A stretch of 63,882 bases of DNA, taken from contig JAVHYY010000154.1 of assembly GCA_035221665.1 (NCBI GenBank), positions 310,119 through 374,000 of the forward strand, given 5' to 3'. Of this stretch, positions 1 through 62,105 are shown piece by piece. The position numbers and the translations under genes are program-made. Below the pieces are notes generated by a model that was given only the letters and a program-made list of their open reading frames with translations, was not told the DNA's origin and searched no databases. Numbering within the stretch: the stretch's first letter is position 1; the number at the start of each line of letters is the position of its first letter. The stretch comes from Okamejei kenojei (taxonomy: Eukaryota).

Positions 1-24
1 ACTATTTTTTTTCCATTTTTACAG

Positions 25-119
25 ATGTATCAAAAGTGAATTTAATCTCTCTCACGTTGATGGTGTTGAGGATCCTCCTGTTCAATGTCCTGTTGACGGC
101 CTGCGTCTGGATGATTTAA
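25..119 (+). CDS. T-cell receptor alpha/delta constant region, transmembrane/cytoplasmic exon (partial gene; upstream C exons lie outside the window)
   Basis: Polypyrimidine tract and ttttacAG acceptor (23-24) open a phase-1 exon reading (D)VSKVNLISLTLMVLRILLFNVLLTACVWMI*, with TAA at 117-119 followed at once by a G|GTGAGG donor. This fits the TCRa/d TM pattern KVN-x-x-SLT-x-x-x-LR-x4-K-x4-N-x-LLT and the TRAC/TRDC layout in which the stop ends the TM exon and the last exon is untranslated. Five residues including the Lys are missing. The exon is too short for the ORF track. Confidence 0.8.
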
Positions 120-441
120 GGTGAGGCTGGTTCACTCAAATTGGCACATGGAAAGACATCGTGTGGCCGCTGGTCATGTCCGGAATAAACGGTGCAAGCA
201 ATATTTCTCGATTGTCCATGTCGTAACCCCCCGCTGATCGTCCGGCTCCAGCCACATTGTGAAGTTAATGCTGAATTATTTAGGTTTTTGAACGTTTGCG
301 GAAGGATAGTTACTCGTCACCCTCAGTACACATGCTACTGTTATATATTCTGCTGTTATATAATGATTAATTAACATCGTCTGGCCATTTTGCACCTCCA
401 CCACATACAATTTACATATCGTTCTCAAACGTGTCTATATG

Positions 442-1150
442 TAGAACTTATAGAAACATAGAAACATAGAACATAGGTGCAGGAGTAGGCCATTCGGCCC
501 TTCGAGCCTGCACCGGCATTCAATATGATCATGGCTGATCTTCCATCTCAGTATCCTGTACCTGCCTTCTCTCCATACCCCCTGATCCATTTAGCCACAA
601 GGGCCACATCTAACTCCCTCTTAAATATAGCCAATGAATTGGTGACCTTGGAGAAGTTTCCGTCGGTTGTGGAGATTAAACCTTACTTACAAGATGTCGG
701 ACGTGTTTTCTTTCTGCTAGTCACAACAGGGCCTTCTGTGGCAGAGATTCGCCACTCTCTGTGTGAAAAATGATTTTCTCATCTCGGTGCTAAAAGTCTT
801 CCCCCTTATTCTTAAACTGTGACCCCTTGTTCTGGGGTTCCCCAACATCGGGAACAATCTAGCCTGTCCAACCCCTTAAGAATCTTGTAAGTCTCTATAA
901 GACCCCCCCTCAATCTTGTAAATTCCAACGAGTACAAGCCGAGTCTATCCAGTCTTTCTCCATATGGAAGTCCATCCCAGGAATCAGTCTGGTGAACCTT
1001 CTCTGTACTCTCTCTATGGCAAGAATGTCTTTCCTCAGATTAGGAGACCAAAACTGTACGCAATACTCCAGGTGTGGCCTGACCAAGACCTTGTACAACT
1101 GTAGTAGAACCTCCCTGCTCTTGTACTCAAATCATTTTGCTATGAAATAG
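442..1150 (-). mobile_element. CR1-clade LINE 3' fragment ((CTATGTTT)n-tail family)
   Basis: ORF 910-1098 ([18 protein letters not shown]...[14 protein letters not shown]) is the CR1 ORF2 C-terminus; ATAGAAAC microsatellite tail at about 445-470. Confidence 0.85.
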
Positions 1151-1849
1151 CAAATTACTTGCTTTTTAGTTTAGGTAGGATCCACCCAGTTGAACAGTAC
1201 TACTTACATGCATTACACCATAAAACTGAAATCCCTGTGTAAATGTAACCTGTAATAGTAGATTGACAACAAAAAAACACGTTCACTAGTCTTTATTTGG
1301 AAATCGCACATGTTGGATTATATGTGTCTCTACAGCCGTTAAATTGGCACCTTCTCAGTCTAGGTACCATATTAGCAATGGAGTTGGGATATGTATGAAG
1401 GAATGCTCCGAACGTGCTTCCTCACGAAGATCCCTCCATCCGCAGATGCGATTGATATCTAAAAGGATAGTGGGGATAGAGTATGTCATTTAAACAATAA
1501 TTAATAATAATGATAAATTGTTTCATAAATGAGACGTGCAATGTTTGACGTCTGGCAGATTAACGCGAAGGCGCTAAATGGTCCATTGCTTGTTTTAAGA
1601 ATCAGTTTAAATCTAGTTATCCTGTAAGGTCGCATATATAATGCACAAATCTCCCGAATCATTCCCGCAATATCTTCAGACCTTTTTCTAATTCCAGTGC
1701 CAAAAATCTGGTTCAATGCCCTGTAATGGACATGCCAATGCATCGCTGTTCCAGTTTGAGGTTTTATTTACAACAATCAGGACTTTTAATATTCGCTATC
1801 TCAACCTTGCTCGCATGTAAAAGTTTAAGAGCATGCACGTAAAGATTCA

Positions 1850-6580: not shown

Positions 6581-7840
6581 GAAGCAACAACAATGCAAAG
6601 GAGGTGGTATGAAAGCGAGTACTTCCACCGGATTAATCTTTCTTCACAGCGCACACGCGAAATATTTTATTTCCAATCAGTTTTTCTGCAATTTCGGTTT
6701 GATATATAATCATAGTTCACCGATTACCGGCGGTTACATCGATTACAGGCGACAAGAGGGTTCTTGGATATCAGACCGCCTGTCTCAATGAACGGTAGAA
6801 CACGAGAGGTTTTTTCAATGTGTACCCGTTGATAAGCCAAGCAATGGCAAAAATGCAAAAATGCTTTGGAGGTGCGGTTGCAGAAAAGGCCTAGTTGAAA
6901 GAAACTGCGGTGTTGTCGCCTTGGCTGGAAATTAGAAGACGTTGAAGGGGTGCAAAGAATATAGACCACATCTTGAAGATAAGTGGGACACTTTTTTAGG
7001 CAGATTATATTGGCTGTGTGAAACACGCTGCCAGGGGTGGCGATAGAGCTAGATGTGGTGGCGTCATTTAAGAGGTTTTTTTTTAGACAAATGGGTATTC
7101 AAGGAATGGAGGGGGATGGATCATGTCCTGGCAGATTAATCTAGTTTGCACCGATAATATGGGCCGAAGGGCCTTTTCCTGTGCTGTACTTTCTATGCCC
7201 TATAATAAGATGTAATGACAATATATTTAGCATCATACATTTATTTTTTTCCAGACTGATTAGACATCAATAAAACAAACACATAAATCGTTATTAATAT
7301 CTGTGATCACTTCTGTGACCAAATGTGTTGCTTCCCGACCGGAGAAAGAAAGCATTACAGTGCATATGCCTATGTTTCCAGTTAGTACTGCTCCCTTTGC
7401 AACCGTCTCCCTCCAATTGTACTTTTTGAACGGCGCCAAATTTCGTAAAATACCACTGGCCGGTGCACCATAAAGGGGTTATTTTACGAAATTAGGATTA
7501 GAATAGTGTAGCAAACCCCCACATCATCTCTGTTTCAATAAGAGTGTTGGGAATTCTCACGTCGGCCCGAGGTCAATATCTAACCAATGTTATTATGTCC
7601 TAATAATCGTGTCAATCCGATTTATTTTCTGACATTGGGAATTTGCTCCGCACAACTTTTGCTTATTTTACACTGGAAGTCTTACAACTATCTGATTCGT
7701 CTAATCGTGAGCGAGCATTTTCATAGTTCACGGAGAGAAAACATTAACATTATGGGCGAGAATATAAATTATCAACATATATACGGTCCCAATGCAACTA
7801 ACAATTCCGCGTCACTATTGGAAAGTGAGGCAGAATGCTC

Positions 7841-8759
7841 CTATGATCGCTCTCTGATACATTTTCTCATCACATTGACAGGGTACTTGACCGCAATCTT
7901 CAACTGCTGTCTAAATTTTGTCTGCGTCCCCGCATAGATACACGAGTTGGTGCAGGAACAGAGCAGATCCAACATGTGTCCGCTTTCCTTGCAGAATAAA
8001 CTTTGGATCATAGGAATTAGTGTTGGTGGCGTAGATCTTGCTTGAAATTTGGACGAAAAGGAAATTTACAATGTAGGTCAGTTTCAACAGGAGAAAGGTA
8101 CCAGAGATCGCCATGAGTAAAATGATAGACCGCCTCCTGCTCTCCATCTCCGGGTCGCTTTGTTTATCGCTCTGGCTTTGGGCGCGGAGCCTCCTGCGGG
8201 CTGCGCTGGCTGCAAGGATATGTTTGATAGTGAAGGCGTTGAGCATGGAGATCAGAACGAACGGGAGACATGGGTTTAAAATGCGGTGCATCCAATCTCA
8301 GAATCTCCATGCAACGGAAGTATAATAGATCTCCCTTATGATGCAGTACCAAGATACGTTATCCATGATGTAGGAGGGGCTCATATTTAAAATACAGAGG
8401 GACGTTTTTCAAAATGCCGAGTAGGCAGACGGCTCCAATGACGACCGGCGCGATTTTCTCTGTACAATATCTTAGCTTCACTTTCTGGCAACAAATGGCG
8501 ATGAACCGATCGAAGGTGAACGCGACCGTGAACCAGACTGAAGCGTCTTTGGAAGCCCAGCTGGGCAGAATAATGAGACTGCACGCCGGGGTGGTGGACA
8601 GGAAACTGGAGTTGAAGTAAATAACCCGATGTCGGCTTAAGATAACGGCAGTGACAATGACCAGGAGATCCGCCGCCGCCATAAACACCAGGTAGCGAGT
8701 GATGCATTTGGAGAGGCCGCATCTTCCTTGCGATAGAATTACAATCGTCAGCAGGTTAG
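7841..8759 (-). pseudogene. GPR139/GPR142-like class A GPCR pseudogene (copy 1, exon 2 only)
   Basis: Acceptor cccacAG|CT at 8760-8761; reads ANLLTIVILSQGRCGLSKC...FDRFIAICC...NSCIY...IRERS* (TAG 7841-7843). Carries +1 indels near 8373 and 7988 and an in-frame TGA (WRF*DW, about 8298-8300). Exon 1 is deleted (junction about 10465). Confidence 0.9.
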
Positions 8760-9469
8760 CTGTGGGAGAGAGCGAGAGACACAGAGACAGAGAGAAAGAT
8801 AGTGGGTGGGGGTGGTGTGAAAGATAGTCAGAGAGAACAGTCATGATTTGCACCTCGTTACATTATCGGCAGACAGGCGTGAAATTAGTTGATCTGATTA
8901 AAACCGCTGGCTAGGAATACAATTAAATAATCTATTCCTAATTCACATCAATAGTTATGGTTTATTTGAGATCCCAGTATCACTTAATACATCAAACGAA
9001 CAAATTATAAGCAGTTAATGCATTAGACATCGAAGCATGCAATTCGAATTACACACAATGAAAGGTTCACCGTTCACCCTGCATGTGTCCTGCGGGGTAA
9101 GAATATTGGATACGTCTGCTGGAGTGATCCCTGTGATTATTCAATGCGTCCACTTTACCCGAAAGCTCATACTCCAACAGCGTTATTGTCAGTAATTTAT
9201 GCGAAGAAGGGAGCGACACAAACCGTAACGGTCGCAGACAGAATACGAGCTCATGACCGCCTAAAACAGAGTTGAGATATTTGACGTATATCAACACATA
9301 TTGGTTATAGGGAGAATGACGCGTTAGAGATGTTTTTTGTTGGTGCGGACGTCCGTACATAAACATGAATTTGTTGAGAATAATAATGCGTACATGGGAG
9401 ATAGCTTTCTGAATGTCAAAATAACAACAACAACAAATTTGTTAGACACCGATAGAAATGAAGAAGAGT

Positions 9470-9950
9470 ACATCCTGGGATGTCAGGACTTTCATATGAG
9501 GAAAGACTGGATAGACTCGGCTTGTACTCGCTAGAATTTAGAAGATTGAGGGGGGATCTTATAGAAACTTACAAAGTTCTTAAGGGGTTGGTCAGGCTAG
9601 ATGCAGGAAGATTGTTCGCGATGTTGGGGAGGTCCAGAACAAGGAGGTCACAGTTTAAGGAGAAGGGGGAATTCCTTTAGGACCGAGATGAGGAAAACAT
9701 TTTTCACACAAAGTGTAGTGAGTCTCTGGAATTCTCTGCCACAGAAGGTAGTTGAGGCCAGTTGATTGGCTATATTTAAGAGGGAGTTAGATGTTGCCCT
9801 TGTGGCTAAAGGGACCAGGGGGTATGGAGAGAAGGCAGGTACAGGATACTGAGTTGGATGATCAGCCATGATCATATTGAATGGCGGTGCAGGCGCGAAG
9901 GGCCGAATGGCCTACTTCTGCACCTATGTTCTATGTTTCTATGTTTCTAT
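9470..9950 (+). mobile_element. CR1 3' fragment inserted in the GPCR copy 1 intron
   Basis: GLSYEERLDRLGLYSLEFRRLRGDLIETYK; (CTATGTTT)n tail; absent from the paralogous intron of copy 4 (about 61480). Confidence 0.9.
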
Positions 9951-11129
9951 CAGTATTATAAGCACTGTCGGAAGTAAGGCGGTATACGCATTTATCGAGA
10001 AGGTAAAACAGATAGGAAAAATAAACAGATATAAAAAATAAATGCAACGCTGTGTCTCCATACGTAGCACTCGTGAGAATTGCGGAATTGGGGCTTTTAG
10101 GGAATACAAAGCAGCTCATTGTGCAACGGCGCCCTCTATGGGATGTGTTACGGGGTGTATCGCAATAAATTGGCCGAACGCCAATGCAGGCAAGTAATCC
10201 ATGCATTTCAGGCTATCAATATTTGATTGCGCTGCAATGATTAGTCGTGGAAAAATATAAAGCAATAGAACTCACAACTCATCTGGTAGACCAACGGGCT
10301 CGCAAAAAAAAAAACATTTTCGAGACTTGATTAAATTGATATTTTCCACAAACATAATAAGCAATCTTGAAATGTTTTGCTTAATTTATTTTGCATAATT
10401 TGTAATGAAACGCCGCTTAAATAACAAAAAAACGCGAAAGACACCCAGATATGAAACCATTAATTTGAGAACAATCAAATGGCGAGTTTTAATCTCTAGT
10501 AGAGGCATCGTTGTCCTTATGTATAGTCCAGATAGCAATCTCCAGAGCAATAACATCATAATGATCGTTAGTCACAGATACTTGAACAAACAAATTATGG
10601 CAGTCATCTGCACACGTTGGTTACATAATTAGAGGTGAAGACATACAGGTTTATGATGGAATAGTGCAAATCTAAGTTAACTGGCAGAAGGTAGCTGCGG
10701 ATATGTCCAATAACTCAGTTAGATAGAGCGAAATAAAGTGCAAAATATGTGAGATTAAATAGAAAGAGAGAGTACGGACACAATAACCGTTAAACAACGT
10801 TGCTCGGTCGTTTTGCCACCACCGATTATCTGGCAAGGCGGAGGTGCTTATCGGACGATCAAGGGGCCTAGATAGATACTGGCATGCCTTCAATTAGTCA
10901 GGGACTGTGAGTATTTGGGAGCCGCATTGTCCAAAGTATTCCACATGCCTAATTGGAGGCAATGGTTAGCGATCTGAGAGTCCCCTATCCTTTTGCAAAT
11001 ATGCCGAATCGACTATTAAGCGACTATTACATCGTATTGGTCTGGGTTGCCAATGTATATGTAATATGGAAAGGTGGCGTGCCTAATATGGTCCTCTGCC
11101 CACAATGTCTATGTCGAACATGATGCCAA

Positions 11130-12860: not shown

Positions 12861-12899
12861 GCTTTTTGTTGAGCAACAGCTCAATGTTGAATCACTGTG
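12861..12899 (-). other. V(D)J recombination signal sequence, 23-bp spacer
   Basis: Minus strand CACAGTG (12899-12893), 23 nt spacer, ACAAAAAGC (12869-12861), directly after the CALS codons. Confidence 0.95.
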
Positions 12900-13337
12900 A
12901 GACTTAGCGCGCAGAGATACAGGCCGGAGTCCTGAAGCTTTACTTGTGTGATTGTCAACGGGATATTCCCTCCATTGGCCAGATCAGCCGCGAACCTCTC
13001 CCTTGCAAAATCCGCTTTTTCATTGTTGCTGTTATCCCGATACAAAATAAACTGCGGAGCCTGATCCGCTTGCTGTCGGTACCAATAGAGGTCGGGGTTG
13101 TCGCTACCTGTCGAGTACCTGCACTGTATTTTCACTGTCTTTCCTTCAACCACACTTAACTCGGTTTCCGGCTGCGTAACCGACTCTCCCCGAATATCCC
13201 CTGAAAAGTAAACGTTGGTGAATTGTGTTCAGCATTGAGTTGGAAAGTTGCAAACGTGGCATAAAACACAACGGAGAAAAGGCACCGTGATACTTACCGA
13301 ACACAGTGCATATTATCATAAGAATGTGGGAGAACAT
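12900..13337 (-). CDS. T-cell receptor alpha/delta V gene segment V1 (leader exon 13337-13298, V exon 13200-12900), apparently functional
   Basis: Leader MFSHILMIICTVFG|GTAAGT, 97-nt intron, tttcAG acceptor. V exon DIRGESVTQPETELSVVEGKTVKIQCRYSTGSDNPDLYWYRQQADQAPQFIL...LTITQVKLQDSGLYLCALS has the conserved C, W, D-x-x-x-Y-x-C and CALS; canonical RSS follows. Confidence 0.93.
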
Positions 13338-14550: not shown

Positions 14551-17500
14551 GACCATAATATAATATAACCATATAACCATATAACCATATAACAATTACA
14601 GCACGGAGACAGGCCCTCTCGGCCCTTCCAGTCCGTGCCGACCATTTGTTTTCCCCTAGTCCCATCTACCTGCACTCAGACCATACCCCTCCATTCCCTT
14701 CACGTCCATATACCTATCCACTTTACTTTTAAATGTTAAAATCGATCCTGCCTCCACCACTTCTGCTGGAAGCTCATTCCACACAGCCACCACCCTCTGA
14801 GTAAAGAAGTTACCCCTCACGTTACCCCTAAACTTCTGTCCCTTAATTCTCATGTCATGCCCTCTTGTTTGAATCTTCCCTACCCTCAATGGGAAAAGCT
14901 TATCCACGTCAACTCTGTCTATCCCTTTCATCATTTTAAAAGACCTCAATCAAGTCCCCCCTTAACCTTCTGCGCTCCAAAGAATAAAGACCTAACTTGT
15001 TCAACCTTTCTCTGTAACATAGTTGCTGGAACCCTGGCAACATTCTAGTAAATCTCCTCTGTACTCTCTCTATTTTGTTGACATCCTTCCTATAACTAGG
15101 CGACCAAAATTGTACACCATACTCCAGAATTGGTCTTACCAATGCCTTGTACAATTTTAACATTACTTCCCTACTCCTATATTCAATGCTCTGATTTATA
15201 AAGGCCAGCACACCAAAGGCTTTCTTTACCACCCTATCTACATGCGATTCCACCTTCAGGGAACTATGCACAGTTATTCCTAGATCCCTCTGTTCCACAG
15301 CATTCCTCAATTCCCTACCATTTACCATGTACGTCTATTTTGATTTGTCCTGCCAAGATGTAGCACTTCACACTTATCAGCATTAAACTCCATCTGCCAT
15401 CTTTCAGCCCACTTTTCCAAATGGCCCAAATCTCTCTGTAGACTTTGAGAATCTACTTCATTATCCACAATACCACCTATCTTAGTATCATCTGCATACT
15501 TACTTATCCAATTTTCCACCCCATCATCCAGATCATTGATGTACATGACAAACAACAGTGGACCCAACACAGATCCCTGAGGCACCCCACTGGTCACCGG
15601 CTTCCAACCTGACAAACAGCCATCCACCATTACTCTCTGACATCTCCCATTCAGCCACTGTTGAATCCATCTTGCTACTCCGCCATTAACACCCAAAGAT
15701 TGAACCTTCTGAACCAACCTTCCATGGGGAACCTTGTCAAAGGCCTTACTGAAATCCATATAGACAACATCCACTGCTTTACCCTCATCAATTTCCCTAG
15801 TTACCGCTTCAAAAAATCCAAGAAGGTTTGTCAAACATGACCTTCCAGGCACAAATCCATGTTGACTGTTCCTGATCAGACCCTGTTTATCCAGATGCTT
15901 ATATATATTACCTCTAAGTATCCTTTCCATTAATTTGCCCACCACTGACGTCAAACTAATAGGTCTATAATTGCTAGGTTTATTCTTTGAACCCTTTTTT
16001 AAACAATGGAACAACATGCGCAGTACGCCAATCCTCCGGCACTATTCCCGTTTCTAATGACATTTGAAATATTTCTGTCATAGCTCCTGCTATTTCTACA
16101 CTAACTTCCCTCAATGTCCTAGGGAATATCCTGTCAGGACCTGGAGATTTATCCACCTTTATATTTTTCAAAAGTGTCAGTACTTCCTCCTCTTTGAATC
16201 TCATAGTTTCCATAGCTACTCTACTTTTTTCCTTTACCTCACAGAGTTCAATATCCTTCTCCTTGATAAATACCGAAGAAAAGAAATTGTTCAATATCTC
16301 CCCCATCTCTTTTGGCTCTGCAGATAGCTGTCCATTCTGGTTCTCTAATGGTCCAATTTTATCCCTCGTTATCCTTTTGCTATTAATATAGCTGTAGAAA
16401 CCCTTTGGATTTACTTTCACCTTTCTTGCCAAAGCAACCTCATATCTTCTTTTAGCCTTCCTAATTTCTTTCTTAAGATTCTTTTTACATTCTTTATACT
16501 CCTCTAGCACCTCATTTACTCCATGCCTCCTATAATTATTGTAGATATCTCTCTTTTTTCGAAACAAGTGTCTAATTTCCCTTGAAAACCATGGCTCTTT
16601 CCAATTTTTACTATTTCCTTTCAACCTAACAGGGACATAAAGATTCTGTACTCTTACAATTTCCCCTTTAAATGTCCTCCATTTCTCTTCTACATCCTTC
16701 CCATGAAACAACGTGTCCCAATTCACTCCTTTAAAATCCTCACGCATTCCCTCAAAGTTACCCTTTCTCCAATCAAAAATCTCCACTCTAGGTCCTGTTC
16801 TGACTCGCTCCATAATTATATTGAAACTAATGGTATTGTGATCACTGGTCCCGAAGTGCTCACCAACGCATACCTCCGTCACCTGTCCTGCCTCATTTCC
16901 TAACAGGAGGTCCAGCACTGCCCCTTCTCTGGTCGGTACCTCTATGTACTGCTGCAAAAAACAATCCTGCACACATTTTACAAACTCCAAACCATCCAGC
17001 CCATTTACAGAATGTGTTTCCCAGTCTATTTTTGGGAAATTGAAATCTCCCACAATCACTACCTTGTGCTTACTACTAATATCTGCTATCTCCTTACATA
17101 TTTGCTCTTCCAATTCTCGCTCCCCATTTGGCGGTCTATAGTACACCCCTAAAAGTGTTGCTACACTGTTCCCCCTTCTCAGTTCCACCCAAATAGCCTC
17201 CCTAGACGAACCCTCTAATCTATCCTGCCAAAGCACTGCTGTAATATCCTCTCTGACAAGCAATGCAACACCTCCACCTCTGGTCCCTCCAATTCTATCA
17301 GCCCGGAAGCAACGAAATCCTGGAATATTTAGTTTCCAATCACAGCCCTCCTGCAACCATGTTTCACTGATTGCCACAACATCATATTTCCAGGTGTCAA
17401 TCCAGGCTCTAAGTTCATCCACCTTACTTACAATGCTCCTAGCATTAAAATATGCACATTTTATAAACCCACCATCCTTTATTCTCTGTCTATTATCGTT

Positions 17501-23555: not shown

Positions 23556-23593
23556 GGTTTTTGTACAGTGTCGGGGAGTTTTGTAACGCCGTG
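23556..23593 (-). other. V(D)J recombination signal sequence, 22-bp spacer (23-type)
   Basis: Minus strand CACGGCG (23593-23587), 22 nt spacer, perfect ACAAAAACC (23564-23556). Confidence 0.9.
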
Positions 23594-23891: not shown

Positions 23892-24009
23892 CTGGAGTGA
23901 ATAATTCAATTCATCTCTTTATCGAATTCTTCGTCGACAAAGCTCACACCAGCAGCAAAAAGTATACGCTAATCTGCCATTAATATGTCCATCGGTATTG
24001 AGGAGATGG

Positions 24010-43097: not shown

Positions 43098-44042
43098 TTA
43101 TAGTGCTCCCAACACCGCGTGTCCAAAGCTTGTCATAGTGTGAACAGGTTTATTGTAGAACTTTGAAAAAGTTTCTTCTTTACTCCACCCTGCGACTTTT
43201 AAAATATGCTCGAGAGGTACGTCCCGCCCCTTCGCCGCGGACGTAGCGCCCGCCCTGGTGGAGTGAGATTTGAACACATCAGTGTCTACTCCCGCTAAAA
43301 CCAACACCTGTTTCAACCATTTTGAGATAGTTTGAACTGAAGCTTTTGTGTGTGGATTTTTGTGCGTAACCATTAACGCTTTTTCATTTCCTCGAAGGGT
43401 GTCAGTAACTTTAATATATTCGTTCAAATGTTTAACCACACACAAAGTAGGATCAATATGATAAGCTTGAAAGGTTACCTTTGTTCCAGATCTCCCTGGT
43501 CTGCTTTGTTTGATCAACTCGTAAACATAGAACACAACATTATCTGTAGTCACATGCATACAGTCTAAACGCAACATTTGTAAAGTTTGCACTCTTTGAG
43601 CTGAGACCAGTGACATTAACATGACTAATTTCAATGTCAATCTTTCCAATGTCAACCCTTCAATTGGAGTCCATTGTCTAAGTAGCGTAAGTACAATGCT
43701 CACATCCCAAATCTCTGTGTATCTCGGTGTGGGTGGATTAATATTAAAGATTCCTTTCATGAATCTAGATATTAATGGATGCGACCCAATTGATCTGTGA
43801 TCCGTCATAAGTCCTAAATAGGACGACAAGGCACTGCGTGCAGTGTTAATGGCACTGTAACTTAAATGTTGCTGAAAATGCAAATTGGTAAGGAATTCCA
43901 AAACATTTGCAATATTTACAGTATCATAAGAAATATTTGACTGTGTGCAAAAGTCTTCCCATTTCTTAATATGTGTCATATATTGTTTTTGTGTGCTATT
44001 GCGCCATGATGCAACCATAACTTCCATAGTTTGGTCCGACAA
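43098..44042 (-). CDS. DIRS1 tyrosine recombinase
   Basis: 314-aa ORF with a SAM-like N-domain and catalytic motifs SAQR, IKQSRP, HSTR, AGW and FYNK. Confidence 0.92.
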   Translation of the reverse strand: MSDQTMEVMVASWRNSTQKQYMTHIKKWEDFCTQSNISYDTVNIANVLEFLTNLHFQQHLSYSAINTARSALSSYLGLMTDHRSIGSHPLISRFMKGIFNINPPTPRYTEIWDVSIVLTLLRQWTPIEGLTLERLTLKLVMLMSLVSAQRVQTLQMLRLDCMHVTTDNVVFYVYELIKQSRPGRSGTKVTFQAYHIDPTLCVVKHLNEYIKVTDTLRGNEKALMVTHKNPHTKASVQTISKWLKQVLVLAGVDTDVFKSHSTRAGATSAAKGRDVPLEHILKVAGWSKEETFSKFYNKPVHTMTSFGHAVLGAL

Positions 44043-44065
44043 TCCCAGCTCCTGTAGTGGTCAGG

Positions 44066-45959
44066 TCAAAACCTGCAGATTAACAAATTCATATATGCAT
44101 ACAATGGGTAAATCTCTTTAGTTACCGGATTAGTCAAGATATCACTACAGTTAGGAATCGACATATATGGTTCTTTAATCATATTCAGCATTACTGGGAA
44201 CCAAGGTTGAGTTGGCCAATTTGGAACTACCAACAATCCAGAAGCAGAATCTTGTTCTATCTTCTTCAGGCATCTCTGAATCAAAGCAAATGGTGGAAAA
44301 GCATAAAAGAACATCTTTCCCCAGTGTAATGAAAAAGCATCTACTGCTACTGCATCTGGATCGTGTTCCCAAGACACATAAGTAGGCAACTGATGATTAA
44401 GCCTAGATGCAAACAAATCTATTTCTGGCAACCCAAATTGGTTTACAATATTCTTAAATATTGCTGGCTTAAGCATCCATTCCGTATTATCTTTAAAAAT
44501 CCTGGACCTTTCATCTGCTACCACATTGTCCTTACCCGGAATGTAGCTTGCTGAAATCCATATTTGGCGACCAATACACTATTGCCATATCTCATTGGCC
44601 AGACAATCACATGATACTGACCTAACTCCCCCATGTGATTAATGTATGCAACAGCCGTTTTATTGTCTAACTGTATTAACACATGTAGACCTTGTTTAGC
44701 ACAACAATATGCTTTAAGTCCATAAAAAGCACCCAATAACTCCAAATAGTTAATACCATAAACTTGAAGAAACGCTTCTTCTTGAGCTTTCCATCTACCT
44801 CCACAACTGGAGGACGAATCTGTAGCCCCCCCCATCCGAGAGCACTAGCATCCGTTTGTAAAACCATTTCAGGTTGTTTAATCGTGATATTCTTAGCAGC
44901 TTGTGGGACATTTTCAACCCACCATTGTAATTCCAACACGGCTTCTTTTGTTAATTGCATAGGCCTGTCAAAGTGACCTGCCTTCTCTTTAAGAGCCCTT
45001 ATTTTGTCCCTTTGAAGATTTTGATAATGTAATGGACCAAATTCCACTGCCGGAAATGCTGCTACCAGTTTCCCAATGGTTTTCGCCACTTCTCGGATGG
45101 AGGGATAAGGTTTGTGAATGAGGTAATTACAAGTCATCAAGATGTCATTGGCCTTCTCTGTTGGCAAAGTAACTAACATAGTCACTGAGTTAATTACAAA
45201 CCCCAAAAAGTTAATTGATTGTGCTGGCTGCAGCTGGGACTTAATTGGATGAATCAAAAACCCTAGCTTTTCAAACAAAGCTTTAGTAACTGAAACTGAG
45301 TGCTCAGCTGACTCTTGAGTATCACTAATGATCAGAATATCATCCAGATAAGCCATAACAATGTGTTTCTGTGCTCTTAATTGGGCTAAAACTGGTTTCA
45401 ACAGTTTTGTAAAGAGTCTAGGAGCCGAACTCAATCCATTTGGTAAAGCTTTAAACTGCCATAATTGTCCCAGCCAATTAAATTTTAAATACCTCCTGAA
45501 GCATTGATGAATTGCTACAGAATAATAGGCATCCTTCAAATCAATCTTAGCCATATAACACCCTGCTGAGATAAGATATTTTGCAGTACTGAATGTCTCC
45601 ATCTTAAAATGTTTGTATTCTACAAACTTATTCAGATCTGTAAGGTCCAGAATAATTCTGCAACCACCATCTTTTTTATCTCTTCGAAATATATTAGAGA
45701 CAAATTGATGCTTATGTTCATAAGTCTTTTCAATTACGCCTTTTCCAGATAATTTGTCAATTTCCACATTAATCTCCATTCTTTCCTCTGCAGAAAACAC
45801 ATAAGCATAAGCAGGTCTATTCTGTACAGGAGGATTAACCCCTTCTTTAAAAATAATAATGGCTCCCGAAACTGCTTGTAATACATATCGATCAGAAGTA
45901 ATGTTAAGCCAGGCATTATAAAATTTTTGCAATCTCCCTCCAACTGGAGAGTCATCCAC
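44066..45959 (-). pseudogene. DIRS1 pol (RT, RNase H, DNA adenine methyltransferase-like domain), frameshifted as assembled
   Basis: RIILDL, DLKDAY, LPNGLSSAP, YLDD; TDAS, INYLEL, QLDN; DLFAS...YAFPPF. Split across three ORFs. Confidence 0.88.
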
Positions 45960-45974
45960 AGTTTCTTTAAGTCT

Positions 45975-47088
45975 TTAATACCTCTCCGTATGAGCGTGGT
46001 GGTCTCCTTCTTCCCGAATACAGGGAAGCACTTGCCTGCACAGCACGATAGTATTTTCGTGACAAACTTCTGCTTCTATAACGGAAATCGAAACCCCTTC
46101 GGGTCGAAAAACCCCTTCTTTGTCCAAAACAAAAGGTTTAACATTGCTAAAAATATTTAGCTTCTTCATCCAACTCTTTCAGCTGTTTCGGCAGATTTTC
46201 TCCAAACAAATACCCAGGAGCTTGAACTCCACTTTCTTGACACAGGCTTGCAAATCTAGGGTGAAATATGGGCCGAATCGCCATTTTCCTCATGCAATTA
46301 ATTTCATAGAATGAATTACATAATAAGCCCAAAGTATCCTTTTGAATCTTTTCCATTTCCAGATTCTCCATTTGCCTGCCATAGGCCGTAATGGCAGCAG
46401 AAATTAATTTGAGCACCTTTTGAAACTTCACTTCTAGGGCTCTCATACTTGGAGTCATAGACGTCCATATCATCGGATTCACCGTAGGTACTTCCAATGA
46501 GGCACAATTTCTTGGAGCTTTATATAATTCTGATGTTTCATTCATCACAGAATTGTGAAGTTGGTGAGATACCATATAATTTATGTTTGCAGCTAGGATT
46601 TCTTCCATAGCCTCACCACTTCCTTCAGGTATAGCAAAATCTTGTGCTATCCCAGGAACATTAGGCCTTTTCTTTTTACTTTGTGGTGTGCTCTCAAAAG
46701 CCATATAGCCACCAGCAGGGTCTGCCTTCTGCAGCCCTAAATCAATTGGGATATCATCCCATGAGACTTCTTCCAGCCCAAATCCTGGGTCCGGAGTATC
46801 ATATTCCCAACTTGGCCCACAGCCATATTCATCATATTCAAACCCCTCAGGGATTTTTTGGGATTCATCTGGGTACCCTGACCCTTGTCTCATTATTGTT
46901 TGGAGAACTTTCTCCATATGCTCCATTTTTAGCCACATAGTTTTATTGTCTGGAGGTCTTTCAATATCAGAGTCATCAGAAACCACGGGCCTCTCAGATT
47001 TCTTTTTGCATTTTTTAGGAACATTTTCCTCCGTGGTTATTATTTCTGGAGAATCTGGAAACTCACTATCGGGTAAATCGGCGGCCAA
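45975..47088 (-). CDS. DIRS1 gag-like ORF1 (probable frameshift near 46150)
   Basis: 313-aa ORF directly upstream of pol inside the ITRs; PxN..VPTVNP.IW and LFGENL motifs typical of DIRS gag. Confidence 0.7.
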
Positions 47089-47609: not shown

Positions 47610-47698
47610 ATGGTAGACAAAAGTGCTGGAGAAACACGGCAGGATCTATGGAGCGAAGGAAATAGGCAACGTTTCTGGCCGAAACGCTTCTTCAGACG
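47610..47698 (-). mobile_element. Short Penelope-derived terminal fragment with a hammerhead-like motif
   Basis: Orthologous to 59025-59118 (shared by GPCR copies 3 and 4, absent at copy 1). Confidence 0.6.
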
Positions 47699-48102: not shown

Positions 48103-49715
48103 CTATGATCGCTCACTGATACATTTGCTCATTACATTGACAGGGTACTTGACCGCAATCTTCAACTGCTGCCTAAATTTAGTCTGCGTCCCCGCATAGA
48201 TACACGAGTTGGTACAGGAACTGAGGAGATCCAACATGATTCCGCTTTCCTGCAGAATAAACTTTGGATCATACGAATTAGTGTTGGTGGCGTAGTTCTT
48301 GCTTCGAATTTGGACGAAAAGGAAATTTACAATGTAGGTCAGCCTCAACAGGAGAAATGTACCCGAGATCGCCATGAGTAAAATGATAGACCGCCTCCTG
48401 CTCTCCATCTCTGGGTCAGTTTGTTTATCGCCCTGGTTTTGGGCGCGGAGCCTCCTGCGGGCTGTGCTGGCTGCAAGGATATGTTTGATAGTGAAGGCAT
48501 TTAGCAGGAAGATCAGAGCGAACGGGAGACATGGGTTTAAAATGCGGTGCAGCCAATCATAGCATTTCCACGCAACGGAAGTATAAAATAGCTCCTTTAT
48601 GATGCAGTACCAAGGAACGTTATCCGTGATGTAGAGGGGCTCATATACAAAATATAGAGGGACGTTTTTCAAAATGCCGAGTAGGCAGACGGTTCCAATG
48701 ACGACCGCCGCGCATTTCTCTGTACAATAAATTAGCTTCACTTTCTGGAAACAAATGGCGATGAACCGATCGAAGGTGAACGCGACCGTGAACCAGACGG
48801 AAGTGTCTTTGGAAGCCCAGCTGAGCAGAATAATGAGACTGCACGCCGGGGTGGTGGACAGGAAACTGGAGTTGAAGTAAATGACCCGAAGTCGGCTTAA
48901 GATAACGGCAGTGACAATGACCAGGAGATCCGCCGCCGCCATAAACACCAGGTAGCGAGTGATGCATTTGGAGAGGCCGCATCTTCCTTGCGAAAGAATT
49001 ACAATCGTCACTAGGTTANNNNNNNNNNNNNNNNNNNNNNNNNNNNNNNNNNNNNNNNNNNNNNNNNNNNNNNNNNNNNNNNNNNNNNNNNNNNNNNNNN
49101 NNNNNNNNNNNNNNNNNNNNNNNNNNNNNNNNNNNNNNNNNNNNNNNNNNNNNNNNAAAGATTGTTAGAGAGAACAGTAGTGATTACGCACCCAGTTACA
49201 ATATCGGGAGACAGGCGTGAAATTAGTTTATCTGATTAAAACCGCTCGCTTTATCCTTTAAAATCACCGCCCCACGAACACGCGAGTGGCTGAGATTACA
49301 ATTAAATAATATATCCCTTGTTCATGTCAATAGTTATGGTTTATATGAGATCTCATGTGTCACTGAACACATCAAACGAACAAATTATATGGAGTGGATG
49401 CATTAGACATCAAAGCATGCAATTCGAATTACACACAATGAAAGGTTCACTGTTTACCCTGCGTGTGTCTTAGAAACATACAAACATAGAAAATAGGTGC
49501 AGGATTAGGGCATTCGGCCTTTCGAGCCTGCACTGAGTACCCCTATAATTGGTAGAGAAACGTTCGCCAAATAACTAAAAACGAGAAAGTCACCCAGATA
49601 TGATACCATCAATCTCTTGTTGCCCCAAGTTCAGTCACATTTTACCTGGGACACCGAAAGTAGCAAGAGTTGAATAATACACGGCGAAGACAGGTCCATT
49701 TCCAGGCGCATGCAT
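48103..49715 (-). CDS. GPR139/GPR142-like GPCR, copy 3 (exon 1 49715-49646, exon 2 about 49019-48103), apparently intact
   Basis: Exon 1 MHAPGNGPVFAVYYSTLATFGVP|GTAAAA; open exon 2 (ORF 48103-49011) with DRF and NSCIY. The splice acceptor falls in N gap 49019-49156. Confidence 0.87.
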
Positions 49716-59024: not shown

Positions 59025-59410
59025 GATAGATAAAAGAGCTGGATAAACTCAGCGGGAGCACAGCATCTATGGAGCGAAGGAAATAGGCAACGTTTCGGGC
59101 CGAAACCCTTCTTCAGACGACAAATTTCGTAAAGTCCTATTCTTTTAGGACCGAGATGAGATAAACATTTTTCACACAGAGAGTGGTGAGGGTCTGAAAT
59201 TCTCTGCCACAGAAGGTAGTTGAGGCCAGTTCACTGCCTATATTTAAGAGGGAGTTAGATGTGGCCCTTGTGGCTAAGAGGATCGGGGGGTATGGAGAGA
59301 AGGCAGGTACAGGATACCGAGTTGGATGATCAGCCATGGTCATATTGTTCAGGCTCGAAGGGCCGAATGGCCTAGTCCTGTTCTTATTTTCTATGCTTCT
59401 ATGCTTGTAT
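59025..59410. mobile_element. Short Penelope-derived fragment (-, 59025-59118) and CR1 3' fragment (+, about 59137-59410)
   Basis: GTCTGAAGAAGGGTTTCGGCCCGAAACGTT on the minus strand; CR1 tail homologous to 9675-9950. Confidence 0.7.
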
Positions 59411-59805
59411 GTAAAATACCAAGGACCGGTGCACCATAAAGGGGTTATCTTTAGCAAATTAAGTTTAGACTAGTGTAAAAACACATCATCTCTATTTCAA
59501 TAAGGGTGTTGGGAATTCTCATGTCGACTTGACGTCAATATCTAACCAATGTTATTATGTCCTAATGATCGTGTCATTGCGATGTATTTCTGACATTGCG
59601 AATCTGATCCACATAACTCAATTTTGTTTATTTTACACTGGAAGTCTTTCAACTACCTGATTCTTATAATCGTCAGCAAGCATTTTCATAGTTTAGGGAG
59701 GGCAAACATTAACGTTATGGGCGAGAATATAAATTATCAGCGTTTACATGATTCCAATGCGACTAACAATTCCGCGGCACTATTGACAAGTCAGGCAGAA
59801 TGTTC

Positions 59806-60726
59806 CTATGATCGCTCTCTGATACATTTGCTCATTACTTTGACAGGGTACTTGACCGCTATCTGCAACTGCTGTCTAAACTTAGTCTGAGTCCCTGCAT
59901 AGATACACGAGTTGGTGCAGGAACTGAGAAGCTCCAACATGTGTCCGCTTTCTTGCAGAATAAACTTTGGATCATTTGAATTGGTGCCGGTGGCGTAGTT
60001 CTTGCTTGTAATTTGGACGAAAAGGAAATTTACAATGTAGGTCAGCCTCAACAGGAGAAAGGTACCAGAGATCGCCATGAGTAAAATGATAGACCGTCTC
60101 CTGCTCTCCATCTCCGGGTCGCTTTGTTTATCGCCCTGGTTTTGGGCGCGGAGCCTCCTGCGGGCTGCGTTGGCTGCAAGGATATGTTTGATAGTGAAGG
60201 CGTTCAGCAGGAAGATCAGAACGAACGGGAGACATGGGTTTAAAATGCGATGCAGCCAATCATAGCATTTCCACGCAACGGAATTATAATATATCTCCCT
60301 TAAGATACAGTACCAAGGAACGTTATCCGTGATGTAGAGGGGCTCATATACAAAATACAGAGGGACGTTTTTCAAAATGCCGAGCAGGCAGACGGTTCCA
60401 ATGACGACCGCCGCGATTTTCTCTGTACAATATCTTAGCTTCACTTTCTGGCAACAAATGGCGATGAACCGATCGAAGGTGAACGCGACCGTGAACCAGA
60501 CGGAAGTGTCTTTCGAAGCCCAGCTGAGCAGAATAATGAGACTGCACGCCGGGGTGGTGGACAGGAAACTGGAGTTGAAGTAAATGACCCGAAGTCGGCT
60601 TAAGATAACGGCAGTGACAATGACCAGGAGATCCGCCGCCGCCATAAACACCAGGTAGAGAGTGATGCATTTGGAGAGGCCGCATCTTCCTTGCGAGAGA
60701 ATTACAATCGTCACTAGGTTAGCTGT

Positions 60727-60768
<42 letters not shown>

Positions 60769-62105
60769 GAGAGAGATAGAGAGAGAGAGAGGGTGCGGGT
60801 GGTGCGAAAGATTATTAGAGAGAACAGTAGTGATCAGGCACCCCGTTACAATATCGGGAGACAGGCGTGACATTAGTTTATCTGATTAAAACCGCTCGCT
60901 TTATCCTTTAAAATCACCGCCCCACGCACACGCGAGTGGCTGAGTTTACAATTAATAATATACTCCTTGTTCATGTCAACAGTTATGGTTTATATGAGAT
61001 CCCATCTGTCACTGAACACATCAAACGAACAAATTATATGGAGTGGATGCATTAGACATCAAAGCATGAAATTCGAATTACACACAATGAAAGGTTCACC
61101 GTTTACCCTGCGTGTGTCTTGCGGGGTAACAATATTGGATACGACTGCTGGAGTGATCCCTGTGATTATTGATTGCGTCCATGTAACACTTTACCCGGAC
61201 ACGCGGGCTATTTGAAAGTTCATACTTCAACAGCGTTATAGTCTGTAATTTATCCGAAGAAGGGAGCGACACAAACCGTAACGGTCGCTGACAGAATACG
61301 AGCTCATGGCCAGCTGAAACAGAACTGCGATATTTTGACGAATTGTAACACATGTTGGGTAAAAGGTGAATTACGCGATAGAGATGTTTTTTGATGGTGT
61401 CGACTTCCGCAGATAAGCTTGAAAGCATGGCAGAGAGCATTCTGAATGTCAAAAAAAAGGTTTATAGGCACCGGTCGAAATGAATAAGAATAAATCGGTG
61501 TTATAAGCACTGCCGGGAGGACGGCGGAATACGCATTTACCGAGAGGGTAAAAGAGATCGGAAAAAAATGCAACGCTGTGCTTTCAAACACGGCGCTCGT
61601 GAGAATGGCGGAATTGGGGCTTTTCGGGAATACAAAGCAGCTCATTGTGCAACGGCGCCCTGTATGGGGATGTGTTGATGGATGTGTCGTAATAAATTGG
61701 GCGAAAGCCAATGTAGGCAAGTAATCCATGCATTTCAGGCTAACTTATGATCTGATTGCGCTGAAATGATTAGTCGTGGAAAAAATATAAAGCAGTACGA
61801 ACTCACAACACATCTGGTAGACCAAACTGTGCTCCAACAAAACATAAGTGTATCCCCCGCGTTCCGAGACTTGATTTAATTGATATTTTCCACAAACACA
61901 ACAGAGAACAAACAATCGAGAAATGGGTTTTTGTATAATCGGTAAAGAAACGTTCCCCACATAACTAAAAACGAGAAAGTCACCCAGAGATGATACCATT
62001 AATCTCTTGTTGCCCATGGTTAAGTCACATTTTACCTGGAACACCGAAAGTAGCAACAATCGAATAATAAACGGCGAAGACAGGTCCATTTCCAGGCGCA
62101 TGCAT
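59806..62105 (-). CDS. GPR139/GPR142-like GPCR, copy 4 (exon 1 62105-62036, exon 2 60722-59806), intact, 328 aa
   Basis: Exon 1 MHAPGNGPVFAVYYSIVATFGVP|GTAAAA; (CT)n tract and cccacAG|CT acceptor; open 7TM exon with AAAD, FDRF and NSCIY. Confidence 0.92.

What the first reader, a model, noticed from the sequence alone, without database searches (positions are those of the whole stretch)
1..62105. GPR139-like GPCR tandem array interleaved with a TCR alpha/delta locus
Seen: the order is C-TM exon(+), GPCR pseudogene(-), V1+RSS(-), V2+RSS(-), GPCR2(-), GPCR3(-), GPCR4(-), so all GPCRs are co-oriented with the V segments. Established: non-TCR gene arrays occur within TCR loci (olfactory receptors at mammalian TRA/TRD, trypsinogens in TRB), and mammalian GPR139 is a single-copy aromatic amino-acid sensor. 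Inference: this is an expanding, diversifying receptor family in chromatin that RAG opens and rearranges. It may be co-regulated by TCR enhancers in T cells (a lymphocyte chemosensory repertoire) or be the chondrichthyan counterpart of the OR-TCR linkage. I cannot tell from the sequence whether this linkage has been reported.
Basis: partly seen in the sequence, partly recalled or inferred. Interest (0 to 1): 0.85.

Follow-up and report, generated by a model that had tools for sequence, protein, structure and literature searches.

The report
Orphan GPCR genes among skate TCR-delta V segments
In a skate genome, four tandem copies of an orphan receptor gene (only distantly like GPR139, hugely multiplied in sharks and rays) lie among T-cell-receptor delta-type V segments; this most likely parallels the olfactory-receptor and trypsinogen genes found inside mammalian TCR loci, and nothing yet shows a shared function.

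Summary
The order is: TRDC-like TM exon (+), GPCR pseudogene, V1 with 23-RSS, V2 with RSS, then three intact GPCR genes, all on the minus strand. The psiGPCR-V1-V2-GPCR2 interleaving lies in 39 kb with no gaps.

- **GPCR genes:** each has two exons, the first being a 70-nt exon 1. They copy as ~3-kb units that do not include the V segments. They evolve under purifying selection (dN/dS 0.15-0.30).
- **Family:** they are not GPR139 orthologues. Identity to human GPR139 is about 28%, although GPR139 is the nearest solved relative. They belong to an elasmobranch-wide expansion (109 clusters at 50% identity with E<1e-30) spread over several chromosomes per species.
- **V segments:** both are TRDV3-like and inverted 3' of the C-delta-like exon.
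- **Linkage in other species:** One Heterodontus V1-like germline V lies on the chromosome that carries most of that shark's GPCR copies.
- **Expression:** no RNA evidence was obtainable, so lymphoid co-regulation is unsupported.

First readers noted the same interleaving in the adjacent window and on other pieces of this genome; I could not check those notes.

I read the GPCR genes as passengers in a TCR locus.

The parts
25..119 (+). TRDC-like transmembrane/cytoplasmic exon (DVSKVNLISLTLMVLRILLFNVLLTACVWMI*). AG acceptor at 23-24, stop at 117-119, GT donor at 121-122. The conserved TM lysine is missing.
   Evidence: The only PDB hits are human T cell receptor delta constant TM segments (E 0.46-1.9). 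Query residues 3-29 align to 32 chain residues, so the exon is 5 residues shorter.
7841..8760 (-). GPCR1 pseudogene, exon 2. Two 1-bp insertions (codons 128 and 256 of exon 2) and one in-frame stop. Exon 1 is missing where homology to GPCR3/4 breaks, at about 10464-10467.
   Evidence: tblastn finds it in three frames. Indels and stop. Upstream alignment loses exon 1.
13298..13337 (-). V1 leader exon (MFSHILMIICTVF plus 1 nt), with a GTAAGT donor.
12900..13200 (-). V1 V exon, TRDV3-like and apparently functional (conserved Cys, WYRQ, YLCALS).
   Evidence: PDB hits include TRDV3 7lli at E 1e-16. It is 56% identical to coelacanth 'TRDV3' P0123 and 82% to the rearranged V-(D)-J transcript product P0121.
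12861..12899 (-). V1 recombination signal: CACAGTG, 23-bp spacer, ACAAAAAGC.
   Evidence: Chance expectation is 0.06 per window.
23594..23891 (-). V2 V exon, TRDV3/TRAV-like. Its functional status is uncertain.
   Evidence: The best PDB hits are TRDV3 and then TCR alpha chains. It is 64% identical to the rearranged transcript product P0122. DNA run X1 carries a 6-bp in-frame insertion after 23739.
23556..23593 (-). V2 recombination signal: CACGGCG, 22-bp spacer, ACAAAAACC (non-consensus heptamer).
23950..23980 (-). The only plausible V2 leader exon. It has an in-frame TAG at codon 4 (MAD*RILFAA), and the intron would be only 58 nt.
   Evidence: The X1 contig covering this stretch shows no difference here.
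29833..29902 (-). GPCR2 exon 1 (MHAPGNGPVFAIYYTILAVFGVP plus 1 nt), GTAATG donor.
27452..28359 (-). GPCR2 exon 2, intact, including the stop. The intron is 1473 nt.
   Evidence: Pfam 7tm_1 at E 1e-13. It is 77% identical to Amblyraja P0002.
49646..49715 (-). GPCR3 exon 1.
48103..49018 (-). GPCR3 exon 2. The ORF is intact, but the first base and the splice acceptor fall in gap 2.
   Evidence: It is collinear with GPCR4 on both sides of the gap.
62036..62105 (-). GPCR4 exon 1. A TATA-like motif lies about 50 bp upstream and is conserved in GPCR3 and the pseudogene.
59806..60722 (-). GPCR4 exon 2, intact. The acceptor follows a (CT)n tract and the intron is 1313 nt.
   Evidence: Pfam 7tm_1 at E 1e-15. 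The best hit is 89% identical, from Leucoraja erinacea.
7201..10785 (-). Copy 1 of the ~3-kb duplicated gene unit. Copies 2 and 3 are 47442-50037 and 59411-62444.
   Evidence: Self-blastn gives 85-95% identity, and the V segments lie outside the unit.
39000..39194 (.). Assembly gap 1, inside purine-rich simple repeats. It was not filled.
49019..49156 (.). Assembly gap 2. It corresponds to the (CT)n tract plus acceptor of the GPCR3 intron. It was not filled.
14569..18569 (-). Near full-length LINE (endonuclease plus RT). Copies 95-97% identical lie at 2993-5963 and 62706-63882. This is intergenic filler and not part of the system.
43098..47088 (-). DIRS-like retroelement (RT plus tyrosine recombinase) between GPCR2 and GPCR3.

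Best explanation
**What it is.** The window is the stretch just 3' of a TRDC-like gene in a skate TRA/TRD-type locus. It carries two inverted TRDV3-like V segments. Members of a lineage-expanded orphan class-A GPCR family have multiplied among them by local tandem duplication of a ~3-kb two-exon gene unit.

**What is shown.**
- The GPCR genes are autonomous, selectively maintained receptor genes. Each has its own ATG exon and canonical splice sites, and omega is 0.15-0.30.
- One of the four copies has decayed, which is ordinary birth-and-death turnover.

**What is inferred.**
- The GPCR genes are genomic passengers in the V region, like olfactory-receptor genes at mammalian TRA and trypsinogen genes in TRB. 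They are not functionally tied to V(D)J recombination.
- The V segments would join D/J elements upstream of C by inversion. That would flip the intervening GPCR genes in those T cells and would not delete them.
- The receptors are ligand-diversified sensors of unknown tissue and ligand. Variability is concentrated in the extracellular-facing parts.
For: - **Anatomy and gene models:**
- **Duplication unit:** self-blastn shows three ~3-kb units, 85-95% identical, that exclude the V segments. tblastn finds only two V segments in the window.
- **Selection:** dN/dS is 0.15-0.18 for GPCR2 against GPCR3/4 and 0.30 for GPCR3 against GPCR4 (dS 0.12). The pseudogene has 3 lesions and has lost exon 1.
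- **Family size and spread:** 2027 hits, the top 120 all elasmobranch 'probable GPR139', and 109 50%-identity clusters at E<1e-30. Copies lie on several chromosomes per species.
- **Phylogeny:** the window's genes sit in a batoid subclade whose sister group is shark sequences, so there are old subfamilies plus recent local duplicates.
- **Nearest known receptor:** GPR139 is the closest solved receptor by single sequence, family profile and fold.
- **TCR identity of the neighbours:** the V segments are TRDV3/TRAV-like with 23/22-bp RSSs, and related V sequences occur in rearranged V-(D)-J products. The C exon matches only human TRDC TM.
- **No RSS by the GPCRs:** none was found beside any GPCR gene.
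- **Independent sequence support:** contigs from DNA run X1 reproduce V2, the spacer and GPCR2 at single-copy depth.
- **Another species:** a Heterodontus V1-like germline V (P0334) lies on the same 59,489,666-bp chromosome as most of that shark's closest GPCR copies.
Against: - No expression data of any kind could be obtained, so 'passenger' is an argument from analogy and from the lack of any structural coupling.
- Interleaving is reported, unchecked, in many other windows of this genome. That extent might exceed what chance co-location would give.
- Fine-scale conservation in other species was not testable.
- Ten long fused gene models of family members contain no V-set domain. This gives no support for close V-GPCR adjacency elsewhere, but it is weak evidence either way.
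Confidence: 0.7

Rival explanations
1. Functional coupling. The GPCR array is co-regulated with the TCR V region through shared open chromatin or enhancers and is expressed in thymocytes or T cells as a lymphocyte chemosensory repertoire. On this view the linkage is maintained by selection.
For: - All six units are co-oriented in this window.
- Unchecked scan notes report the same interleaving in the adjacent window and on several other pieces of this genome.
- A V1-like V and the main GPCR cluster share a chromosome in Heterodontus.
Against: - There is no expression evidence.
- The GPCR units duplicate without V segments and have their own first exon and a TATA-like motif.
- No RSS lies nearby.
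- The family also sits on other chromosomes.
- Another scan note reports opposite-strand arrangements elsewhere in this genome (unchecked).
- From general knowledge, the known passenger families in TCR loci (ORs, trypsinogens) are not T-cell genes.
Confidence: 0.07
2. Assembly artefact. Unrelated GPCR and TCR contigs were joined, or repeats were collapsed, creating a false interleaving.
For: - There are two N gaps in the window.
- The closest Leucoraja homologues sit on small unplaced scaffolds, which suggests a region that is hard to assemble.
Against: - psiGPCR, V1, V2 and GPCR2 lie in one gap-free 39-kb stretch.
- Gap 2 separates exon 1 and exon 2 of one gene, and both flanks are collinear with the GPCR4 paralogue.
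- Gap 1 lies in simple repeats present on both sides.
- Contigs from DNA run X1 match the unique parts at a uniform depth of about 23-46.
Confidence: 0.04
3. The GPCR copies are non-functional debris, meaning retrocopies or transposon-carried fragments that accumulate in a repeat-rich region.
For: - The window is dominated by LINE and DIRS elements.
- One of the four copies is a pseudogene.
- The window's copies have Arg where the family consensus and GPR139 have Trp 6.48.
Against: - The introns are retained, so these are not retrocopies.
- Three ORFs are intact, with ATG and GT/AG signals.
- Omega is 0.15-0.30.
- Homologues 60-89% identical are kept in sharks and rays.
- The model of a full-length homologue is a confident 7TM fold, pLDDT 81.
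Confidence: 0.05

Closest known systems
Human/vertebrate GPR139 (and GPR142), class-A orphan receptor activated by L-Trp/L-Phe
   Same: - It is the best solved-structure match by single sequence (E 4.5e-8), by family profile (E 9.6e-18, against 5.6e-12 for the next receptor) and by Foldseek (rank 1, TM 0.70/0.81).
- Both lack the Pro of the TM7 NPxxY motif: NFFLY in GPR139, NSCIY/NTFIY here.
- NCBI names the homologues 'probable GPR139'.
   Different: - Identity is only about 22-28%.
- This is a multigene family, whereas GPR139 is a single conserved gene.
- There is no Pro at 6.50.
- The window's copies have Arg at the Trp 6.48 position.
- The N-terminus is about 8 residues long.
- Ligand and tissue are unknown.
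- It is not an orthologue.
Non-mammalian 'GPR139-like' orphans (coelacanth XP_005988539, salamander XP_069092602; probably the GPR210A/B clade of PMC6504862)
   Same: - These are the nearest relatives outside elasmobranchs: 31-32% identity, E 1e-29 to 1e-32.
- They too hit human GPR139 only weakly, at 60-70 bits.
   Different: - They have few copies in the taxa seen, whereas the elasmobranch branch is expanded to over a hundred 50%-identity clusters.
- Equating them with 'GPR210' is my inference from the paper's description and was not tested.
Olfactory-receptor genes at the mammalian TRA/TRD locus and trypsinogen (PRSS) genes inside TRB
   Same: An unrelated multigene family sits inside or among TCR gene segments and expands by local duplication. 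The PRSS cluster between TRBJ and TRBV is also described in Xenopus (PMC12529555). The OR case is from my own knowledge.
   Different: - The family is different.
- The genes are interleaved with V-delta-type segments 3' of a C-delta-like exon.
- The array contains several intact copies.
- Conservation across species is not established.
Human TRDV3 / mouse Trdv5 arrangement
   Same: V1 and V2 are most like TRDV3. They lie 3' of a TRDC-like exon in inverted orientation, the known layout of TRDV3 (own knowledge).
   Different: - Here there are two such V segments with GPCR genes between and beyond them.
- The C-delta-like TM lacks the conserved lysine.
Vertebrate chemosensory receptor repertoires (OR, TAAR, V1R/ORA)
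   Same: - It is a large family with tandem arrays, pseudogenes, lineage-specific clades and variability at extracellular-facing positions.
- Sharks have very few ORs (PMC11979771).
   Different: - No expression in any sensory tissue is known.
- The catshark study did not find GPCRs among the top olfactory-enriched genes.

Membership tests
GPR139 orthologue | High sequence conservation with vertebrate GPR139 | tested here: not met
   Human GPR139 scores 36 bits, about 28% identity over TM1-5. The family profile scores 67 bits. Foldseek gives 22-23% identity.
GPR139 orthologue | Single-copy gene | tested here: not met
   There are four copies in 55 kb. The family has 109 clusters at 50% identity with E<1e-30.
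GPR139/GPR142-related clade (superfamily level) | GPR139 is the closest characterised receptor, ahead of other class-A branches | tested here: met
   It ranks first in phmmer, in the profile hmmsearch (a 19-bit margin) and in Foldseek (small margin).
GPR139/GPR142-related clade (superfamily level) | Aromatic-amino-acid pocket residues and activation by L-Trp/L-Phe | not testable with these tools
   Alignment alone shows Trp/Tyr at 3.33 but Arg at 6.48 and Tyr at 6.51 in the window's copies. The roles of these residues are from memory and ligand assays are needed.
Class A (rhodopsin-like) GPCR | Pfam 7tm_1 above the gathering score, 7TM plus helix 8 fold, D-R-aromatic motif at the TM3 end | tested here: met
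   Scores are 48-58 bits against a cut-off of 30.5. The AF2 model of homologue P0005 has pLDDT 81 and 7 helices plus H8. FDRF is conserved.
TCR alpha/delta V gene segment | V-set domain with Cys23/Trp41/Cys104, split leader in phase 1, 23-bp-spacer RSS directly 3' of the V | tested here: met
   V1 meets all of these. V2 has the domain and nonamer, but a 22-bp spacer, heptamer CACGGCG and a stop in the candidate leader.
TCR alpha/delta V gene segment | Closest to TRAV/TRDV and not to Ig or TRB/TRG V; used in rearranged TCR transcripts | tested here: inconclusive
   - V2's best matches are TRDV3 and TCR alpha chains.
- V1's best matches are Ig light-chain V (scFv chains), with TRDV3 next. V1 is 56% identical to coelacanth 'TRDV3'.
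- P0121 and P0122 are V-(D)-J products 82% and 64% identical to V1 and V2. Their species and chain type are not recorded.
TRDC transmembrane exon | KVN..SLT..LR.L connecting-peptide/TM motif with conserved Arg and Lys | tested here: inconclusive
   The only four PDB hits are human TRDC (E 0.46-1.9 for a 31-aa query). Arg is present. Lys is absent and the segment is 5 residues shorter.
Passenger multigene family inside a TCR locus (OR/TRA, PRSS/TRB type) | Non-TCR genes physically between TCR gene segments | tested here: met
   psiGPCR lies between the C exon and V1, and GPCR2-4 lie beyond V2. All of this is in one gap-free stretch up to 39 kb.
Passenger multigene family inside a TCR locus (OR/TRA, PRSS/TRB type) | No expression or function in lymphocytes; linkage conserved across species | not testable with these tools
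- The RNA runs were uninformative.
- The only cross-species hint is at chromosome level, in Heterodontus.
Chemosensory receptor repertoire | Large birth-and-death family with pseudogenes and variable ligand-facing positions | tested here: met
Chemosensory receptor repertoire | Expression in sensory neurons, one receptor per cell | not testable with these tools
   No RNA data were available. PMC11979771 lists no GPCR among the top olfactory-enriched catshark genes.

The most novel reading that the evidence does not exclude
The GPR139-like family is a so-far undescribed elasmobranch 'repertoire' receptor family, chemosensory or immune-sensing. Its interleaving with V-delta/V-alpha segments is ancient, conserved from sharks to skates, and has regulatory consequences. 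Locus-embedded paralogues would be switched on, or chosen one at a time, through the TCR locus's chromatin machinery in lymphoid or sensory cells.
Probability: 0.07. Interest if true: 0.85.

Novelty: new member of a known kind. Interest (0 to 1): 0.4.

Why it matters
**For immunogenetics.** This adds a third kind of passenger gene family inside a TCR locus, in the oldest living lineage with TCRs. It also shows that the inverted TRDV3-like V arrangement 3' of C-delta may predate the split between cartilaginous and bony fishes.

**For sensory biology.** Sharks and rays have almost no ORs. Yet they carry a very large orphan class-A family, already auto-annotated as 'probable GPR139'. None of the full-text searches run here (GPR139 with shark, other elasmobranch terms, T cell receptor/locus, or fish genome expansion) found a paper that discusses it. 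The family is worth deorphanising and mapping by tissue.

**Limits.** Nothing here shows a mechanistic link between the receptors and V(D)J recombination.

Tried and rejected
- **The look-up of encoding contigs:** it was closed, so neighbourhoods of homologues in other elasmobranchs could not be read.
- **First V-segment homologue search:** it gave only 6 proteins and no elasmobranch genome model. The wider search gave a single elasmobranch hit, P0334.
- **XP accession order:** P0334 is about 240 numbers from the nearest GPCR block. This is too rough a proxy to claim adjacency.
- **Fused gene models:** ten long fused GPCR models were scanned for V-set domains. None had one, and one carried hemopexin repeats. 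blastp of V1/V2 against all held proteins found no V-GPCR fusion.
- **Metagenome scan:** it found no relative.
- **Sequencing runs:**
  - No RNA holder of GPCR4 exon 2 was found.
  - The three 'RNA?' runs of the same species look like low-coverage DNA and cover repeats only, so they say nothing about expression.
- **Literature:** no paper holds GPR139 together with 'shark' in a relevant sense, with 'T cell receptor' and 'locus', or with elasmobranch terms. The salamander TCR-locus papers do not mention such genes. The catshark paper's supplements are not held.
- **The search of earlier findings by sequence:** blank, which means nothing.
  - Exon 1 and exon 2 were never joined for any tool. All searches used exon 2 by reference.
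  - The full-length fold used the Heterodontus homologue P0005.
  - The N gaps were not filled or looked up.
- **Rejected reading, GPR139 tandem array in the strict sense:** the genes are not orthologues.
- **Rejected reading, retrocopies:** the introns are kept.
- **Rejected reading, V+GPCR cassette duplication:** the V segments lie outside the repeat unit.

Full report
**1. What is in the window**

The window is repeat-rich vertebrate DNA. Its large ORFs are mostly LINE endonuclease/RT pieces and one DIRS-like element with RT and a tyrosine recombinase. Seven features matter.

(i) *A TRDC-like TM exon at 25-119 (+).* A short exon follows an AG acceptor, encodes DVSKVNLISLTLMVLRILLFNVLLTACVWMI, stops at 117-119 and is followed at once by a GT donor.
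- Its only matches among 177,635 PDB sequences are four human T-cell-receptor delta constant TM segments.
- The E-values (0.46-1.9) are weak because the query is only 31 residues.
- The longest alignment pairs 27 query residues with 32 of the chain, which fits a 5-residue deletion that removes the conserved TM lysine.

(ii) *V1.*
- A 40-nt leader exon lies at 13337-13298.
- A phase-1 V exon lies at 13200-12900 and ends in YLCALS.
- Two bases later comes CACAGTG-23-ACAAAAAGC.
- A signal this good is expected 0.06 times per window.

(iii) *V2.*
- The V exon lies at 23891-23594 and ends in YFCALR.
- It is followed by CACGGCG-22-ACAAAAACC.
- Its only plausible leader has an in-frame TAG, so V2 may be a pseudogene.

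(iv-vii) *Four GPCR copies on the minus strand.* All pass Pfam 7tm_1.

**2. GPCR gene structure**

The long ORFs lack TM1. tblastn with full-length homologues finds a 70-nt first exon 0.6-1.5 kb upstream of three copies. It encodes MHAPGNGPVFA.YY....FGVP plus one base.
- Each has an ATG and a GT donor.
- GPCR2 and GPCR4 have a polypyrimidine/(CT)n tract and an AG before exon 2.
- The predicted proteins are 325-328 aa, the modal length of the family.

All searches used exon 2 by reference.

The first copy (7841-8760) is a pseudogene.
- It has two 1-bp insertions and an in-frame stop.
- Homology to the other units skips exactly the part that holds exon 1.

**3. Gaps**

*Gap 2 (49019-49156).* It begins one base into GPCR3 exon 2.
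- The flanks match GPCR4 at 92.7% and 95.2% identity.
- The gap stands for GPCR4's 60722-60806, which is the (CT)n tract and acceptor.
- The two sides therefore belong together, though the acceptor of GPCR3 is unread.

*Gap 1 (39000-39194).* It lies between purine-rich simple repeats on both sides.

Neither gap matters for the central claim, because psiGPCR, V1, V2 and GPCR2 lie in the uninterrupted first 39 kb. Contigs from DNA run X1 reproduce V2, the unique spacer and GPCR2 with 0-4 differences at a uniform depth of about 23-46. I did not fill or look up the N stretches.

**4. How the array arose**

Self-comparison shows a ~3-kb unit at 7201-10785, 47442-50037 and 59411-62444. It runs from about 400 bp 3' of the stop to about 330 bp 5' of the ATG.
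- The V segments are not in the unit.
- No further V remnant exists in the window.
- Exon 2 of GPCR3, GPCR4 and the pseudogene is 93-95% identical in DNA, while GPCR2 is 74% identical to them.
- dN/dS is 0.15-0.18 for the old pair and 0.30 for the young pair, with dS 0.12.

This is purifying selection, somewhat relaxed after duplication. It is not overall diversifying selection.

Across 99 family members the most variable stretches are the TM2-ECL1-TM3 top, ECL2/TM5 and ECL3. ICL1, the DRF region, ICL3 and helix 8 are nearly fixed. This pattern fits ligand diversification.

**5. What the family is**

*Size and spread.*
- The best hits are 'probable G-protein coupled receptor 139' of skates, rays and sharks. 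They are 89% identical in Leucoraja erinacea and 75-77% in Amblyraja.
- There are 2027 hits in all, and the top 120 are all elasmobranch.
- At 50% clustering there are 109 clusters with E<1e-30.
- The most divergent full-length members that I looked up are also elasmobranch and lie on further chromosomes. Scyliorhinus canicula, for example, has copies on chromosomes of 133.8, 226.0 and 98.3 Mb.

*Relation to GPR139.*
- The nearest relatives outside elasmobranchs are salamander and coelacanth 'GPR139-like' proteins at 31-32% identity.
- Those proteins, and a teleost one, match human GPR139 only at 60-70 bits. They are not GPR139 either.
- They may correspond to the GPR210A/B orphans placed beside GPR139/GPR142 in PMC6504862. 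That equation is my inference.
- Human GPR139 remains the closest solved receptor. It scores 36 bits with one sequence, 67 bits with the family profile (against 48 for the next receptor), and ranks first in Foldseek on a confident model of the Heterodontus homologue (pLDDT 81).
- Shared oddity: neither has the Pro of NPxxY.
- Differences: there is no Pro at 6.50, and the window's copies have Arg (Lys in the pseudogene) where the family consensus and GPR139 have Trp 6.48.

*Phylogeny.* The tree puts GPCR3/4 with Leucoraja P0001 (support 100) and GPCR2 with Amblyraja P0002. Both sit inside a batoid subclade whose sister group is shark sequences, and several other subfamilies each hold both sharks and batoids. 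The family therefore diversified before sharks and batoids split and keeps duplicating locally.

**6. The TCR side**

- V2's best PDB matches are human TRDV3 and then TCR alpha chains.
- V1 matches Ig light-chain V regions and TRDV3. It is 56% identical to a coelacanth protein named TRDV3.
- Two database proteins, P0121 and P0122, are V-(D)-J products 82% and 64% identical to V1 and V2. They share one J sequence, so both V families are used in rearranged receptors somewhere in this group.
- No 12-bp-spacer signal, and so no D or J segment, is in the window.
- Both V segments are inverted relative to the C-delta-like exon and lie 3' of it. To my knowledge this is the arrangement of human TRDV3 and mouse Trdv5, so joining would be by inversion (inference).

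**7. Is the linkage general?**

*Within this genome.* First-stage notes, which I could not check, report the same interleaving in the adjacent window and on several other pieces. They also report NAR-TCR cassettes 68 kb beyond this window.

Indirect tests gave the following:
- Ten long fused gene models and all held proteins show no V-GPCR fusion.
- One germline V1-like V model of Heterodontus francisci (P0334) lies on the 59,489,666-bp chromosome. That chromosome holds most of that shark's closest GPCR copies, including the sister clade of the window's genes.
- That is one chromosome-level coincidence. It is suggestive but is not interleaving.
- The family's presence on several other chromosomes shows it is not confined to TCR loci.

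**8. Expression**

- No RNA run holds GPCR4 exon 2.
- The three 'RNA?' runs of the same species cover only repeats in 23556-29555 and look like DNA.
- Nothing can be said about tissue.

**9. Verdict**

The most economical reading has four parts:
- The genes are a passenger multigene family, orphan GPR139-related receptors.
- The family has expanded across elasmobranchs and duplicates in ~3-kb units.
- The units lie among inverted V-delta-type segments next to a C-delta-like gene.
- The arrangement is analogous to OR genes at TRA and PRSS genes in TRB (the latter in PMC12529555).

Co-regulation with the TCR is neither supported nor excluded. The literature searches run here found no paper linking GPR139-like genes with TCR loci or elasmobranchs. 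A detailed catshark sensory-gene study does not mention the family.

Noticed in passing
window 12861-13337 and 23556-23980 relative to 25-119: Both V segments are TRDV3-like and lie inverted 3' of a TRDC-like TM exon. This is the layout of human TRDV3 and mouse Trdv5, which suggests the inverted V-delta arrangement is very old.
   Followed up: partly
window 23739 (V2): DNA run X1 has a 6-bp in-frame insertion (CAGGAT on the + strand) exactly where the window's V2 is two codons shorter than V1, at the FR2/CDR2 border. This is an allelic length polymorphism or a paralogue.
   Followed up: no
window 23950-23980: V2's only plausible leader exon has an in-frame TAG and would leave a 58-nt intron. 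Together with the CACGGCG heptamer, this suggests V2 is a pseudogene or ORF-class V.
   Followed up: partly
window 25-119: The C-delta-like TM segment is 5 residues shorter than human TRDC and lacks the lysine that normally pairs with CD3. This agrees with an earlier scan note. Whether such a chain can assemble with CD3 is open.
   Followed up: partly
window GPCR exon 2, TM6 (e.g. 59806-60722): The window's intact copies have Arg, and the pseudogene Lys, at the position of the Trp 6.48 toggle. The family consensus and human GPR139 keep Trp there. The whole family lacks Pro 6.50 and Pro 7.50.
   Followed up: partly
window 43098-47088: A DIRS-like retroelement has long intact ORFs: a 427-aa RT, a 314-aa tyrosine recombinase and a 313-aa ORF with no Pfam match. 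It may be recently active.
   Followed up: no
window 2993-5963, 14569-17543, 62706-63882: Three copies of one LINE family are 95-97% identical. One is near full length with a 526-aa endonuclease ORF. This points to recent LINE activity in the locus.
   Followed up: no
window 18700-19345: A 91-bp minisatellite is present in 7.1 copies at 98% identity, directly upstream of the LINE's 5' end.
   Followed up: no
P0121 and P0122 (database proteins): Two rearranged V-(D)-J products with long junctions share one J (MIFGGGTKLTVL). They use V regions 82% and 64% identical to V1 and V2. They are probably skate TCR-delta transcripts of unrecorded origin.
   Followed up: no
P0137 (database protein): A 562-aa gene model fuses hemopexin repeats to a family GPCR domain. 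At least one family member elsewhere therefore neighbours a hemopexin-type gene and not TCR segments.
   Followed up: no
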